Positions 9,001 through 12,819 of a DNA stretch of 64,000 nt are shown piece by piece. Each line of letters opens with the position of its first letter. The first letter of the stretch is position 1. Position numbers and translations under genes: made by a program. Where the stretch lies: the NCBI RefSeq assembly GCF_040938485.1, contig NW_027271550.1:2046001-2110000 (forward strand). The letters run 5' to 3'. The stretch comes from Diadema antillarum. Taxonomy: Eukaryota. Under the pieces are notes generated by a model, which was not told where the DNA came from, did no database searches, and saw nothing but the letters and a program-made list of their open reading frames with translations.

Positions 9001-12000
9001 CCTGCATACGCCCGTCCCACCACATTTTCTGCATGTATCAGTGCACACCAGTGCGCACACACACACACAGACACGTACAACATGCGGTGCTAGCTGGAGT
9101 GCACTGAAGAAATACACTGTATGTGTGTACAAGACACAGTTTTTGGCGCATCGGTCGAGCGAGCTTTACAATCTCGGAACATGATAGCACAGGCGAAGTA
9201 AAGCTTTATCCGAAGACATTTTGCTTTACCTCGCTATAACAGGTTTGATTGGCTATGTTTTTCTTTGTTTGGACATCACGAAATTTATCTCGTTATAGCA
9301 GTTATTTCGTTATAGCCGATCTCGCTATAAGAGTAGCATTTTACATATATTTGTGTGGAAGGAGGACCGGGAAAGTTTCCTCGTAATAACCGATATCTCG
9401 TTATAGCAGTGTTCGTTATACCGAGTTTCCCCTGTACCAGTATGTTTGGTGTATTAAAATTCCACTCTGAATATAGTGAAATATGGACACCCACCTGAAG
9501 AGCGGTAGACTTGGCATAAACAACATCCTCATCAACTCCCACAGCTGTCACTATGGCATCAGTCGACTTCAGCTTGCTGTTCTCTGCTGGAGACTGCAAA
9601 GCAGAAAATTCATACATAACAAGAATTCACCTTACACCATATCTTATTAAGAAAATAACAAAGAGCTTTTGATATAAAGTATATATAAAGTATCGCGGAT
9701 ACTTCAAAAATTCATAACTTTGGAACGGATTGTCAGATTTCCCCTAAAAGTTATGAATTTTTGAAGTTTCTGCTCAGTCATGGCTGGATGAGAAGACTAC
9801 TATAGCTTGTGATGTCACATGTGTACAACAATATAAAGAAAGAATAAAGAAAATTCAACATATTTTCACTTTTCTTGCATAACAAAAGAATGCTTGACTT
9901 CTCTCTTTCAGAAGGCAGGGAGAATAATATTACCCTCACGATACATCAGGAGCAAGTCAAAGAAATGGGCACTTTATTCAAAAAGTAAAGTTTTGTGAAA
10001 TTCTCTTTTTATTTTCATTATATTGTTGTACGCATGTGACATCATGCACTGTAGTAGTCTTCTCATTCAGCAGTGACTGCACGGATACTTCAAAAATTCA
10101 TAACTTTGGAACGGATTTTCAGATTTCCCCTAAACTTTCACTGTGTTCTACTAATATTGTTGCATTCACTCAATCCATGAGGGTGGACTTGTCCTTTAGT
10201 TAAAAATACAATATGCTATGTTTACTGTAATATATGCAGGACATGAATAATCATGGGTTCAATGAGATATTACTCCAGGTATAGAATGTGAGCCCACTTC
10301 ATGGACAAAAAGAAGTCTTGGAGGCTCTACATACTTCTCCTTTCCTATTTGTTTTGTACTTCATGACTTCTACATTTAGGTTGCATACAGTATGAAAGTC
10401 ACAGCTTTGTATACAAGTGGCAAACTTTGCAAGTCAGCCAGTGCAGTGTCAACTTTTTACAAACAAAGTCTAGCTATAAGAGCAGTGGCGATCCAGGCGG
10501 GGGGCGTATGCCCCCTTTATTTTTTGATGAAACAAATAAATAAAAAGAAAAATTTGAAGGAGGCATGTGCCCCCCCCCCCCCTTTAATTTTGCAAAGGCG
10601 CCCTTCCTTCACAGAATTCCTGGATCCACCCCTGTAAGAGGATAAAAATTAAAGGAAACCCACATTCAATGCCCTTTTCTTCCTTTAATCTAACACGACC
10701 CCCCCCCCCCCCAGAAAAAAAAAAGAGAAAAGAAAATGAGATGCTAATGGCCTCACATAAACATTTTTGTTATAGTCTTGTAATTTTATAACAAGTCACA
10801 GTCATTAATCTTTGCTTTGTACTTCAGATTTCATTCAAACCTGCTTCACATGACAAGAAAAGTATTCCTTGCTAGTTGCTACACACCACAATACATTGGA
10901 ACATTGCTGCAAACTTGTTGCAACTCCAATTTGAAGCTTTAGTTTAATGTCAGGTGGTGAAAAGAAAAAAAAAATACAATCGGGAATACTGGAGGAACGT
11001 GATGATAGCAAAGTCAAAGATTTGAGTGGAGTTGTGATCACGATGATCATTCATACTTGCGTTGACCATACCGGGAAGTGGTAAGGTAGGCCTACTGAAT
11101 GGCTTTTGCGACATGGGTACACAAATTGTAGGCCTCTAGACGGTCTGGTTTACTACTGTCTAGAAAGACCTAGTCTAGTTCTAACTAGGCCAAAAGGGTC
11201 TATTACCGTCATTAGAAGAATCTGGACCAGAATTTAGGAATTGAAATGCATAGTCTATCAAGCAATTTTGTAGGCTCGAGACCTGGCTCTGTCTCAGTGT
11301 AGGTCCCTAAGAAATTCTAAATCCTTCTATGTAAGGTGTAGGTCTAGCAGTTCAGTTCGGGAAACCCACTCACAAGGGGGGCCCCTCCTTATAAGTAACC
11401 CGTCCCCCTTATAAGTAACCCCGTCCCCCTTATAAGTAACCCCCGGGGCACCCCTTATAAGGAGTCTCCACGCTTTTTTGCAATGCAACGCGAAAATGAA
11501 AGGACTGCGGCAATTCGCTTGATTATGTCCATAAAGCTTCACAAGTTTCCTAGTTACTCACGAAATTTGAGCAAAATCGGTTTGAGGCATCATATCTAAA
11601 ATCATGGATTTAAATGCGATGTCAAACTACCCGTGCGAATGCTGAAATGCGAGCGATTACTGGCGTGAGTGTCGCCAGGCGCGGCGGCGCGGCAATGCTT
11701 GAGTGCAGACGTGGCGACTGAGTACATGCTCAGTCGCCACGTCTGCACTCAAGCATTGCCGCGCCGCCGCGCCTGGCGACACTCACGCCAGTAATCGCTC
11801 GCATTTCAGCATTCGCATGGGTCGTTTGACATCGCATTTAAATCCATGATTTTAGATATGATGCCTCTAACCGATTTTGCTCAAATTTCGTGAGTAACTA
11901 GGAAACTTGTGAAGCTTTATGGACATAATCAGGCGAATTGCCGCAGTCCTTTCATTTTCGCGTTGCATTGCAAAAAAGCGTGGAGACTCCTTATAAGGGG

Positions 12001-12819
12001 TGCCCCGGGGGTTACTTATAAGGGGGACGGGGTTACTTACAAGGGGGACGGGTTACTTATAAGGAGGGGCCCCCCTTGTGAGTGGGTTTCCCGAACTGAG
12101 TTTGACAAAAGTTCGACATCATAAGTTTAGGATCTATAGACCCTATTTTGTTTAGTACTATTGACTCATCTTCTTCTTGTTGTTGTCGGTAGTCTGCTTC
12201 CATTAACCTTAAGATTCTTGCAGATGCCGGGGTAGGGTGCATGTGCCAATGATAGATTGTTCTAATTAATTTTTATACTAATAAAGTAATATTGTCTACA
12301 AATGTAGGTCTAGATCTAGAAATGTTTTGGACCATAAATTGAAATATTCAGTGCCTCAGTCATAGTTTATAATTAATACACTGAGACAATACAAATGCAT
12401 GGTAACCTAGTACAGTAGTAGGACCTAGCTAGTGGTGTGTACTACAGTGTACAGTCGTGCAGCTCTCGTCTACGGTCTGGGTCTAGCCACAAAAAATGCA
12501 CTCATGTTTTCGGTAGTGGAATTGAAAATTCTTCTCTAACAACCAGTCTCAAAAGCCTATTAGGACACTGAACTTGCTAAGACAGACGCATAAAACTGGT
12601 AGTCACAAGACAGCAAATCAATGAGAAAACATGTTGTACATGTATATAATGACATGACTATGCCCCCTTTCTATATGGTGAGGACTTTTGAATAAGTAAA
12701 ACTGATGCGGCTCATTCTGAGTGATAGGGAAACAACATGATGTAGCTTACCTCCCACTCATCGTAAATCCTCTTCATACGCCGATAAAACGCATCTTTAT
12801 CCACTGCTATGTTCGCCAT
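1..12819 (-). CDS. SUPT16H: FACT complex subunit SPT16 (SUPT16H), 5' part only; coding exons (minus strand) 12819-12751, 9593-9495, 6942-6712, 6154-6062, 4547-4401, 3193-3042, 2030-1858, 916-826, 130-1 (continues off window)
   Basis: Spliced translation [23 protein letters not shown]|[33 protein letters not shown]|[14 protein letters not shown]...KKKVEFL...|[16 protein letters not shown]...|VDISSDF...MEIVDADK|[10 protein letters not shown]...[22 protein letters not shown]|[28 protein letters not shown]...|GAKACDVF...KNVG|[10 protein letters not shown]...[13 protein letters not shown] matches the known SPT16 N-terminal (aminopeptidase-like) domain. Exon phases are consistent (395 codons in window); all introns GT-AG except intron 5 (GC-AG). 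Confidence 0.97.
1813..1839. repeat. (CA)n microsatellite preceded by a poly-C run, SPT16 intron 7
   Basis: Direct reading. Confidence 0.9.
2843..3019. mobile_element. Tc1/mariner (pogo/Tigger-like) MITE, 177 bp
   Basis: TIRs CAGTGGACTCCCATTATAA / CAGTGCACTCCCGTTATAA (17/19), left flank TA (right flank TT); internal CGTTATA motifs shared with the 8492-9434 element. Confidence 0.75.
3239..3665. mobile_element. Kolobok-like MITE (TTAA target), 427 bp
   Basis: TTAA at 3235-3238 and 3666-3669; ends AGGACAAGTTCAAC...GGTGGACTTTTTCT; body is homologous to 9749-10195. Confidence 0.75.
3965..4348. mobile_element. Kolobok-like MITE, second family, 384 bp
   Basis: TTAA at 3961-3964 and 4349-4352; imperfect ~33-bp TIRs AGGGTGTGTACCGCTCTGGTTGAGGTGAGGATT / AGGGACTGTACAGTACTGGTTGAGGTGGGGATT; homologous in reverse orientation to 13599-13983. 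Confidence 0.8.
4958..5711. mobile_element. Non-autonomous TIR DNA transposon with 4-bp TSD (TAAT), GGG...CCC ends (Sola2-compatible, unconfirmed), 754 bp
   Basis: TIRs GGGCAATTCCGCAGTTAG / GGGCAATTCCACGGTTAG (16/18); TAAT at 4954-4957 and 5712-5715; three internal GTAACGTT(A/G)CTAACC motifs at 5320, 5507, 5685. Confidence 0.75.
7146..8375 (-). mobile_element. Helentron-associated interspersed element (HINE / DINE-1-like), ~1.2 kb, with internal ~140-150-bp tandem units
   Basis: On minus strand: 5' T-run + ATGCCTCCACC...GGAGGCAT hairpin, GTCC/GTCT/GTAC microsatellite-like tract, central repeats (GTCCCATCATAC at 7937, 8088, 8226; many TGACCTTTGACC), then sub-terminal repeat GGCGGAGGCG, palindrome GTCGCCATGGCGAC and CTAGTT end - the described HINE layout. 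Confidence 0.75.
8492..9434. mobile_element. Tc1/mariner (pogo/Tigger-like) non-autonomous element, 943 bp
   Basis: TA|CAGTGGAAACTCGATATAAC ... GTTATACCGAGTTTCCCCTG|TA (18/20 TIR, TA duplicated); subterminal CTCGTTATAG repeats. Confidence 0.85.
9696..10195. mobile_element. Rearranged copy of the 3239-3665 Kolobok-like MITE family (left end replaced)
   Basis: 9749-10050 aligns by eye with 3335-3630; right end GGGTGGACTTGTCCT|TTAG intact; left TIR absent and replaced by a 53-bp direct copy of 10082-10134. Confidence 0.75.
10483..10634. mobile_element. Short hAT-like MITE (CAG(T/G)GG..GATCCAGG ends), 152 bp
   Basis: Ends CAGTGGCGATCCAGG / CAGGGGTGGATCCAGG; TAAGAG duplicated on both flanks (10477-10482, 10635-10640). 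Confidence 0.7.
11353..12098. mobile_element. Foldback/palindromic non-autonomous DNA element, 746 bp, 4-bp TSD (AGTT), unclassified
   Basis: Arms pair base for base about 11725/11726 with ~5 mismatches and no indel; AGTT at 11349-11352 and 12099-12102; subterminal tandem CCTTATAAG(TAAC) repeats. Confidence 0.9.

What the first reader, a model, noticed from the sequence alone, without database searches (positions are those of the whole stretch)
11349..12102. 746-bp almost perfect palindrome inserted in intron 1 of an essential gene
Seen: two 373-bp arms pair around 11725/11726 with ~5 mismatches, no indels and essentially no spacer; exact 4-bp TSD AGTT; CAG...CTG ends; four CCTTATAAG subterminal repeats per arm; CpG-rich core not yet decayed. 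It explains the mirror-image ORFs at 11327-11542 and 11909-12124. Established: long spacerless palindromes extrude cruciforms and are unstable, and long intramolecular dsRNA is an ADAR/Dicer substrate. Inference: a young foldback element of unclear superfamily that makes a ~370-bp dsRNA in every SPT16 pre-mRNA (potential endo-siRNA source, editing cluster or fragile site).
Basis: partly seen in the sequence, partly recalled or inferred. Interest (0 to 1): 0.7.

Follow-up and report, generated by a model that had tools for sequence, protein, structure and literature searches.

The report
Young palindromic jumping gene in SPT16 intron
The 746-base palindrome is real: it is one recently inserted copy, present on only one of the animal's two chromosome copies, of a gene-less "foldback" jumping gene with about 850 copies in this sea-urchin genome, a known kind of element whose enzyme I could not find.

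Summary
Observation confirmed. Window 11353-12098 is a 746-bp palindrome: two 370-nt arms with 5 mismatches and no indels, a 6-nt centre, and an AGTT duplication on each side. It lies in intron 1 of SPT16 (minus strand).

It is not an assembly artefact or a local oddity. Its 25-nt terminus occurs 856 + 867 times in the 1.75-Gb genome, against 0 in the control. In 30 sampled loci, 27 copies are full palindromes of 741-771 bp at 96-99% identity, and 29 of 30 have a perfect 4-bp duplication. The target consensus is CY|ANNT|RG.

The other haplotype contig (C303) is collinear at 93-97% and lacks the element, so the insertion is heterozygous.

Across copies the centre is a mutation hot spot: loops of 0-20 nt, centre deletions, solo arms and mini-foldbacks. 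Two sister families share the 15-nt end CAGTYCGGGAAACCC but carry different palindromic subterminal 8-mers.

No coding partner was found, so the superfamily stays open. A 4-bp AT-rich duplication fits Sola2 best; it excludes the classical foldback/TU, hAT and piggyBac types.

The dsRNA, editing and siRNA ideas are untested because no RNA runs were available. "Every pre-mRNA" is too strong.

This scan has already reported other foldback families in this genome. Known kind, new family; modest interest.

The parts
11349..11352 (.). Left copy of the 4-bp target-site duplication (AGTT)
   Evidence: 29 of 30 other copies have a perfect 4-bp duplication at the same boundaries.
11353..12098 (.). 746-bp non-coding foldback (palindromic) transposon copy, family F1
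   Evidence: palindrome; about 850 copies at 96-99% identity; absent from haplotype contig C303.
11353..11367 (+). Terminal inverted repeat core CAGTTCGGGAAACCC. The 15-mer CAGTYCGGGAAACCC is shared with sister families F2 and F3.
11387..11461 (+). Left subterminal array: four CCTTATAAG motifs (a palindromic 8-mer, CTTATAAG) spaced about 20-25 bp apart. Presumed transposase-binding sites.
   Evidence: families D2, D3. Binding is inferred, not tested.
11723..11728 (.). Centre of symmetry: a 6-nt unpaired loop, TACATG. This copy has the 748-bp-type centre (GAGTAC-AT-GTACTC) minus TA.
   Evidence: Contigs of runs X1 and X2 show 'TA put in behind 11728'.
11990..12064 (-). Right subterminal array, the mirror image of the left one. 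One motif is mutated (CTTACAAG; C at 12040).
12084..12098 (-). Right terminal inverted repeat core
12099..12102 (.). Right copy of the target-site duplication (AGTT)
12751..12819 (-). SPT16 exon 1, coding part ([23 protein letters not shown]), followed by donor GTAAGC
   Evidence: Aligns to PDB SPT16 residues 3-21, E 4e-4.
9594..12750 (-). SPT16 intron 1 (3157 nt), which hosts the element
   Evidence: The splice sites are inferred from sequence and homology; no RNA evidence.
9495..9593 (-). SPT16 exon 2 ([33 protein letters not shown])
   Evidence: PDB SPT16 residues 29-54.

Best explanation
The palindrome is one copy of a very young, high-copy, non-autonomous cut-and-paste DNA transposon of the foldback (whole-length inverted repeat) type. 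I call the family F1.

Anatomy of each arm, from the outside in:
- a 15-nt terminal repeat;
- four subterminal palindromic motifs, presumed binding sites for a dimeric transposase;
- about 260 nt of non-coding sequence, up to a centre that varies between copies.

A transposase encoded elsewhere, not identified, cuts the element out at the CAG/CTG ends. It re-inserts it with a 4-bp staggered cut at a loosely palindromic target, CY|ANNT|RG.

The whole palindrome is copied as a unit. Subfamilies share variants that sit on one arm only.

Inferred origin: a snap-back inverted duplication of one 373-bp end of a parent element, at the short inverted repeat GAGTAC/GTACTC. The 10-20-nt loops seen in some subfamilies would be the remains of the original spacer.

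This copy landed in intron 1 of SPT16 on one haplotype only. It is most likely a neutral or mildly deleterious passenger, removed with the intron.

Shown here: structure, copy number, youth, target duplications, the empty allele, the lack of coding capacity, and the centre hot spot.
Inferred: transposase binding to the motifs, the snap-back origin, and any RNA-level effect.
For: - Palindrome and duplication.
- Copy number: the 25-nt terminus occurs 856 times forward and 867 reverse, with 0 in the control. The arm search gave 470 first-look candidates; all 40 scored were 99-100% identical.
- Sampled copies: 27 full copies of 741-771 bp at 96-99% identity.
- Duplications: 4-bp TSD perfect in 29 of 30 copies (ATAT x5, AGTT x3, and others). 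Target logo: C at -2 in 19/30, A at TSD position 1 in 25/30, T at position 4 in 25/30, R just after in 25/30.
- Youth: arms not selected by the search differ from the consensus by 0.51% on average; this copy differs at 5 of 688 positions.
- Copied as a unit: variants shared by subfamilies on one arm only (alignment columns 249 and 327).
- Centre variants. One-nt loops, centre deletions, one-sided deletions and solo arms. Mini-foldbacks.
- Empty allele: contig C303 is collinear at 93-97%. Its left flank ends at 504246 and its right flank resumes at 504209. Alignment A1 shows GGTCTAG|ACAAAAGT with no element.
- Both haplotypes are in the assembly: G000 is 1.75 Gb, the same size as the published haplotype-retaining long-read assembly of Diadema antillarum (PMC13511894).
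- Independent data: contigs of runs X1, X2 and X4 cross the centre.
- No coding capacity.
- Foldback elements are a known class, including in sea urchins (PMC4079207, which cites Liebermann 1983).
Against: - No autonomous partner or transposase was found, so the mobilising enzyme and the superfamily are unknown.
- The empty allele lacks 7 bp (CAGTTTG, which includes the AGTT target) compared with the predicted pre-insertion site. It could therefore be an excision footprint or an unrelated indel, not a clean empty site.
- C303 is taken to be the allele from collinearity and the assembly's known haplotype duplication, not from a linkage test.
- The snap-back origin is inferred from centre variants alone.
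- A few variants are mirrored on both arms (column 280 in L013/L014/L021; column 187 in L026). A simple copy-as-a-unit model does not explain these without arm-to-arm conversion or unsampled subfamilies.
Confidence: 0.9

Rival explanations
1. Assembly artefact: a chimeric or foldback long read created a false inverted duplication at this locus.
For: Long-read libraries are known to produce foldback chimeras. No contig from another run bridges the two junctions of this particular locus.
Against: About 850 copies have the same palindromic structure, each with its own 4-bp target duplication. Contigs from independent runs cross the centre. This copy carries 5 private arm differences, which a read folded on itself would not give.
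Confidence: 0.01
2. The family belongs to the Sola2 group: a DDD transposase of Sola2 type, encoded by a rare or giant intron-rich element elsewhere in the genome, mobilises F1, F2 and F3.
For: Sola2 elements are described as flanked by AT-rich 4-bp duplications (AWWT; ATAT, AAAT, ATTT) (PMC3627910). Here ATAT is the commonest TSD, and A...T holds in about 25 of 30 copies. Earlier notes of this scan report Sola-type transposons in this genome (not tested by me).
Against: The dictyostelid Sola2 termini in that paper's supplement start GAG/GGA, not CAG. No Sola2 transposase query was available to me, and no element with these ends and a coding region was found. G or C occurs at the inner TSD positions more often than AWWT allows.
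Confidence: 0.25
3. The family belongs to another 4-bp-TSD group (AcademX, Ginger1, Chapaev-type CMC) or to an undescribed transposase lineage.
For: AcademX makes 3-4-bp and Ginger1 makes 4-bp duplications (PMC10045372). I could not match the end CAGTYCGGGAAACCC or the target CY|ANNT|RG to any group from the literature I could read.
Against: AcademX: the XPG_I domain, its marker, gives only 7 hits, arranged as near-identical pairs as expected for host genes present on both haplotypes. Ginger ends start TGT (statement in PMC10045372 about related elements, plus my own knowledge), whereas these start CAG. Nothing positive supports any of these groups.
Confidence: 0.5
4. The hairpin is a host-selected RNA element (an hpRNA or miRNA-like locus, or a regulator of SPT16 splicing), not a passenger.
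For: The sense transcript would form a 370-bp perfect stem. Rfam miRNA-precursor models give low E-values at the centre.
Against: All Rfam hits are below their gathering scores, hit both strands alike, and belong to many unrelated families, which is the signature of any perfect hairpin. The element is absent from the other haplotype. It is one of about 850 near-identical copies. No RNA data exist.
Confidence: 0.04

Closest known systems
Foldback transposons (Drosophila FB, sea-urchin TU elements, Tetris, Galileo)
   Same: Almost the whole element is an inverted repeat. There is no coding capacity, the inner domain is variable, the element is multi-copy, and it has target duplications. The class is known in sea urchins since 1983 (PMC4079207 citing Liebermann 1983). 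Autonomous partners are often not found.
   Different: Classical foldbacks have 7-10-bp duplications (Mutator- or P-like) and TIRs built from tandem repeats. This family has a strict 4-bp duplication, only four short subterminal motifs, essentially no middle domain, and a uniform small size (about 750 bp).
MITEs (miniature inverted-repeat transposable elements)
   Same: Small, non-coding and high-copy, with high copy-to-copy identity. They are mobilised in trans, carry a superfamily-specific TSD, and often sit in introns.
   Different: Typical MITEs have short TIRs (10-40 bp) around a unique core. Here the inverted repeat spans the entire length.
Sola2 DNA transposons
   Same: AT-rich 4-bp target duplication (AWWT/ATAT/AAAT/ATTT; PMC3627910).
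   Different: The termini do not resemble the published dictyostelid Sola2 ends. No DDD transposase is linked to these ends.
Other palindromic or foldback insertions reported by this scan in the same genome (e.g. the 1.39-kb foldback in TMEM254 intron 1, and folded-back Harbinger copies)
   Same: Young palindromic non-coding elements in the same genome, some heterozygous, with the enzyme unidentified (AI notes, not checked by me).
   Different: By sequence search they are different families (one search found no look-alike). The notes give 8-9-bp duplications for two of those foldback families and name Harbinger (normally 3 bp) for others.

Membership tests
Non-autonomous TIR DNA transposon (foldback / palindromic MITE) | Terminal inverted repeats at exact, reproducible boundaries | tested here: met
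   The ends CAGTTCGGGAAACC...GGTTTCCCGAACTG are the same in 29 of 30 loci. Termini: 856 + 867 in the genome against 0 in the control.
Non-autonomous TIR DNA transposon (foldback / palindromic MITE) | Target-site duplication of fixed length that differs between copies | tested here: met
   Perfect 4-bp TSD in 29 of 30 copies, with 17 different sequences.
Non-autonomous TIR DNA transposon (foldback / palindromic MITE) | Empty site at an orthologous or allelic locus | tested here: met
   Haplotype contig C303 lacks the element. The site also lacks 7 bp that include the target, so it is not a textbook-clean empty site.
Non-autonomous TIR DNA transposon (foldback / palindromic MITE) | No transposase coding capacity | tested here: met
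   Only mirror-image ORFs of 48-71 aa, with no Pfam match at threshold.
Non-autonomous TIR DNA transposon (foldback / palindromic MITE) | An autonomous partner with the same ends | tested here: inconclusive
   Not found. The longer candidates were a nested insertion, truncated or older foldbacks and solo arms.
Classical foldback elements (FB/TU, Mutator-like) | 8-10-bp target duplication | tested here: not met
   4 bp in 29 of 30 copies.
Sola2 | 4-bp AT-rich TSD (AWWT) | tested here: met
   A at position 1 and T at position 4 in 25 of 30 copies each; ATAT is the commonest TSD. The inner positions are less strictly W, compared with PMC3627910.
Sola2 | DDD transposase of Sola2 type in elements with the same ends | not testable with these tools
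   No Sola2 profile or reference protein was available by reference; no partner found.
AcademX | Partner element encoding a transposase plus an XPG-type nuclease; 3-4-bp TSD | tested here: inconclusive
   The TSD length fits. XPG_I (PF00867) gives only 7 hits, in pairs as expected for host genes on two haplotypes. Their flanks were not read.
piggyBac / Kolobok | TTAA target duplication | tested here: not met
   0 of 29 TSDs are TTAA.
hAT | 8-bp TSD (CAG-type ends are common) | tested here: not met
   The ends start CAG, but the TSD is 4 bp.
Rfam miRNA precursor families (MIR8788, MIR5274 and others) | Score at or above the family's gathering threshold | tested here: not met
   The best hit scores 87 bits against a threshold of 124. 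Many unrelated families hit both strands at the hairpin tip.

The most novel reading that the evidence does not exclude
F1, F2 and F3 share the 15-nt end CAGTYCGGGAAACCC but carry different palindromic subterminal 8-mers (CTTATAAG, CTCATGAG, CTCGTGAG). They may be moved by a transposase lineage not yet described: either a new clade of a 4-bp-TSD superfamily or a new superfamily. It would insert at CY|ANNT|RG, and its DNA-binding specificity would have diversified along with the motifs. If it is still active, as 99% identity and a heterozygous insertion suggest, it would be a live, naturally foldback-mobilising system in an echinoderm.
Probability: 0.15. Interest if true: 0.55.

Novelty: new member of a known kind. 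Interest (0 to 1): 0.3.

Why it matters
For the genome, this explains one more slice of the 30% "unclassified" repeats of this sea urchin (PMC13511894). It defines a family with clean diagnostic features: the 15-nt end, a 4-bp duplication and a palindromic target.

More generally, about 850 nearly spacerless 750-bp palindromes form a natural experiment on palindrome stability in an animal genome. They carry a graded series of centre deletions, loops, solo arms and mini-derivatives.

For SPT16, the heterozygous insertion is a ready-made test of whether a perfect 370-bp intronic hairpin affects splicing, editing or small-RNA production of an essential gene. Nothing here shows that it does.

Tried and rejected
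1. Autonomous partner by paired termini. The only widely spaced pair among the first 100 listed termini (C29, 10.25 kb) is an F1 copy split at position 108 by a 9.5-kb nested insertion; the outer TSD ATTC is intact.

2. Lone termini (L032-L040). These are solo arms that stop at the centre, or truncated copies. Their downstream sequences are unrelated to each other.

3. Terminus variants, found with patterns that exclude F1 and F2. These gave only mutated copies and a low-copy family, F3. F3 is an older foldback of about 2.4 kb sitting inside a larger repeat.

4. A longer F2-type element (L015/L042, extended to 30 kb). It has no 3' end and no Pfam hit. Its 234-aa ORF belongs to an unrelated repeat with more than 1000 candidates.

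5. An arm end followed by a non-palindromic base. One lead (C74, L056) is another solo arm.

6. AcademX via XPG_I: only host-like hits.

7. A scan of public metagenome contigs for the 15-mer end. The hits are single chance matches; the three apparent pairs share no extended TIR.

8. Rfam: only generic sub-threshold hairpin hits.

9. Reads. No RNA runs were available, and the DNA runs are short contigs that do not bridge this locus's junctions.

10. Several key papers were not held: Bao 2009 (Sola), Yuan and Wessler 2011, Kojima 2020 (Academ).

11. The pattern was mis-specified by me. It selected on the last base and not on the divergence point. It still revealed the mini-foldbacks.
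Full report
**1.

The repeat finder reports arms 11352-11722 and 11729-12099: 371 nt, 99% complementary, 6 nt apart. I compared 11353-12098 with its reverse complement base by base. Five arm positions are mismatched (11411/12040, 11519/11932, 11583/11868, 11628/11823, 11633/11818). There is also a 6-nt centre, TACATG, and there are no indels.

AGTT flanks both ends (11349-11352 and 12099-12102). The ends read CAGTTCGGG...CCCGAACTG.

Four CCTTATAAG motifs lie in each arm; one on the right is mutated at 12040.

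GC is 50% against 38% for the window. CpG observed/expected is 1.06 against 0.76.

The two 71-aa and two 48-aa mirror ORFs exist and have no Pfam family. They are a consequence of the symmetry.

**2. Gene context**

SPT16 runs on the minus strand.
- The peptide from 12819-12751 ([23 protein letters not shown], followed by GTAAGC) aligns to residues 3-21 of human SPT16 structures.
- The exon at 9593-9495, preceded by TTTGCAG, aligns to residues 29-54.
- The ORF at 6670-7014 matches Pfam FACT-Spt16_Nlob at 2.9e-23.

Intron 1 is therefore 12750-9594 (3157 nt). The element sits 652 nt from the donor and 1759 nt from the acceptor.

I searched the exons one at a time by reference and built no joined model. 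There is no RNA evidence for the splice sites.

**3. It is a family, not a one-off**

One arm, searched against the window's own genome (1.75 Gb, 2963 contigs), gave 470 first-look candidates. All 40 that were scored were 99-100% identical.

The 25-nt terminus, with up to one mismatch, occurs 856 times forward and 867 times reverse. The reversed-pattern control gives 0. That is roughly 850 elements.

In 30 fetched loci, 27 copies are complete palindromes of 741-771 bp, 96-99% identical to the window copy. The rest are truncated, nested or rearranged.

29 of 30 copies have a perfect 4-bp duplication at exactly these boundaries, in 17 different sequences (ATAT x5, AGTT x3, and so on).

Rebuilding the empty sites gives a loosely palindromic target, CY|ANNT|RG:
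- C at -2 in 19/30;
- Y at -1 in 19/30;
- A at TSD position 1 in 25/30;
- T at TSD position 4 in 25/30;
- R just after the TSD in 25/30.

These features define a cut-and-paste TIR transposon. They also rule out an assembly foldback artefact.

**4. Age and mode of copying**

The arm that the search had matched is biased towards the query. The other arm of each copy is the fair sample. It differs from the family consensus by 1.75 of 344 positions on average (0.51%). The window copy differs at 5 of 688.

Some variants are shared by several copies on one arm only. Columns 249 and 327 are examples, in the subfamily with a 10-nt loop. So both arms are inherited together: the whole palindrome transposes as a unit, and it is not rebuilt from one arm at each jump.

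A few variants are mirrored on both arms (column 280 in L013/L014/L021; column 187 in L026). I cannot tell whether these come from arm-to-arm conversion or from unsampled subfamilies.

**5. The centre is a hot spot**

Copies differ mainly at the axis of symmetry:
- a perfect GAGTAC|GTACTC;
- a 2-nt AT spacer (the 748-bp type);
- 10-, 13- and 20-nt asymmetric loops (GAAAGTCTCC and longer);
- an 11-nt insertion.

The window copy has the 748-type centre minus TA. Contigs of runs X1 and X2 show exactly 'TA put in behind 11728'.

A pattern anchored on the arm end found 82 further variants. They include 1-nt loops, a 4-bp centre deletion, and deletions that run from the centre into one arm.

Solo arms that stop at the centre are frequent (L032, L035, L037, L056). 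There are also mini-foldbacks that keep only the ends, the motifs and the centre.

This is what the known instability of long palindromes predicts.

The loop-bearing forms, flanked by the short inverted repeat GAGTAC/GTACTC, suggest an origin by snap-back inverted duplication of one 373-bp end of a parent element. That is inference.

**6. The insertion is heterozygous**

The left flank (window 10650-11352) and the right flank (12099-12900) both match a second contig, C303. The left flank ends at 504246 and the right flank resumes at 504209.

C303 is collinear with the window's SPT16 5' region at 93-97% identity. It also lacks two other blocks of the window.

The alignment (A1) shows C303 reading GGTCTAG|ACAAAAGT where the window has GGTCTAG-C-AGTT-[element]-AGTT-TG-ACAAAAGT. 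So the element is absent, and so are 7 bp (CAGTTTG) that include the target. This is either an ordinary indel between two very different haplotypes or an excision footprint. Only an outgroup can decide.

The assembly's size equals that of the published initial long-read assembly of Diadema antillarum, which retained both haplotypes: 1.75 Gb, with 84% of BUSCOs duplicated (PMC13511894). That supports reading C303 as the other allele. The species name itself comes from earlier notes of this scan and from this size match. I did not test it directly.

**7. Sister families and the missing enzyme**

Two further non-coding foldback families share the 15-nt end CAGTYCGGGAAACCC but carry different palindromic subterminal 8-mers.
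- F2: CTCATGAG. Example: 574 bp, TSD ATAT, at L024:2553-3126.
- F3: CTCGTGAG. Low copy, about 2.4 kb.

Every longer candidate I could read turned out to be a nested insertion, a truncated copy or an older foldback.

On the superfamily:
- A 4-bp duplication excludes the classical Mutator- or P-like foldbacks (7-10 bp; PMC4079207) and hAT. The absence of TTAA excludes piggyBac and Kolobok.
- It fits Sola2 (AT-rich AWWT; PMC3627910), AcademX (3-4 bp) and Ginger1 (4 bp) (PMC10045372).
- Against Sola2: the published Sola2 ends do not resemble these.
- Against AcademX: its XPG marker gives only host-like hits.
- Against Ginger1: Ginger ends start TGT.

The superfamily stays open, with Sola2-like slightly favoured.

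**8. RNA-level claims**

The sense (minus-strand) transcript of the element folds into a single 370-bp stem with a 6-nt loop, at -761 kcal/mol. Twenty shuffles average -233, giving z = -77.

No RNA run holding this stretch was on offer. The DNA runs are short contigs. So dsRNA formation in vivo, editing and small RNAs remain untested.

Rfam gives only sub-threshold hits to many unrelated miRNA-precursor models on both strands at the hairpin tip, which any perfect hairpin would produce.

Because the other haplotype lacks the element, at most the transcripts of one allele carry it.

**9. Verdict**

This is a real, young, polymorphic copy of a new family of a known kind of element: a foldback, or palindromic MITE.

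This scan has already reported other young foldback families in the same genome. That makes the kind ordinary here.

What is mildly notable:
- the strict 4-bp duplication with a palindromic target;
- the trio of families with one shared end and different binding motifs;
- the large natural series of centre-destabilised palindromes;
- a heterozygous perfect hairpin in an essential gene's first intron.

No operator restriction was met.

Noticed in passing
window 7145-8375: A 1.23-kb interspersed repeat in the next SPT16 intron has at least 40 copies at 83-92% identity elsewhere in the genome. It is absent from the other haplotype contig C303.
   Followed up: no
window 8493-9436: A block of about 940 bp upstream of exon 2 has no counterpart in the C303/C2530 alignments. 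It is another presence/absence difference between the haplotypes.
   Followed up: no
window 9602-10271: This part of intron 1 has an extremely high summed contig depth in all DNA runs, with many internal joints. That points to a very abundant short repeat, possibly tandem or SINE-like.
   Followed up: no
L024:2553-3126 and L015:2278 onward (= L042:30): Sister foldback family F2: end CAGTCCGGGAAACCCG and subterminal CTCATGAG motifs. One copy is a 574-bp palindrome with TSD ATAT. A longer variant carries internal tandem repeats of about 20 bp and has no 3' end within 30 kb.
   Followed up: partly
L049:181, L050:9838, L051:7443-9855: Low-copy sister family F3: end CAGTCCGGGAAACCCTCTCGTGAGGAGGGTC. 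It is a foldback of about 2.4 kb embedded in a larger duplicated repeat. L049 and L050 are 98% identical, including their flanks, so they are probably the two haplotypes.
   Followed up: partly
L032, L035, L037, L056 (C1:1328839, C8:1209044, C9:4652110, C74:586529): Solo arms: one complete 373-382-bp arm that ends at the centre of symmetry, followed by unrelated DNA. This would fit breakage or deletion at the palindrome tip.
   Followed up: partly
G000:C1177:264995, C1495:134996, C631:704248, C794:974953: Mini-foldbacks in which the fourth subterminal motif is joined directly to the centre, so about 250 nt of each arm is lost. The sequences themselves could not be fetched.
   Followed up: no
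L031:1121 to L041 (C29:1009720-1019219): A 9.5-kb insertion with no ORF of 150 aa or more is nested in an F1 copy at element position 108. A 651-bp piece of it recurs in L034.
   Followed up: no
L042:4547-5248: A 234-aa open frame with no Pfam match belongs to a repeat with more than 1000 candidate copies at 45-97% identity, many with stop codons. It is an unclassified abundant element.
   Followed up: partly
   Followed up: no
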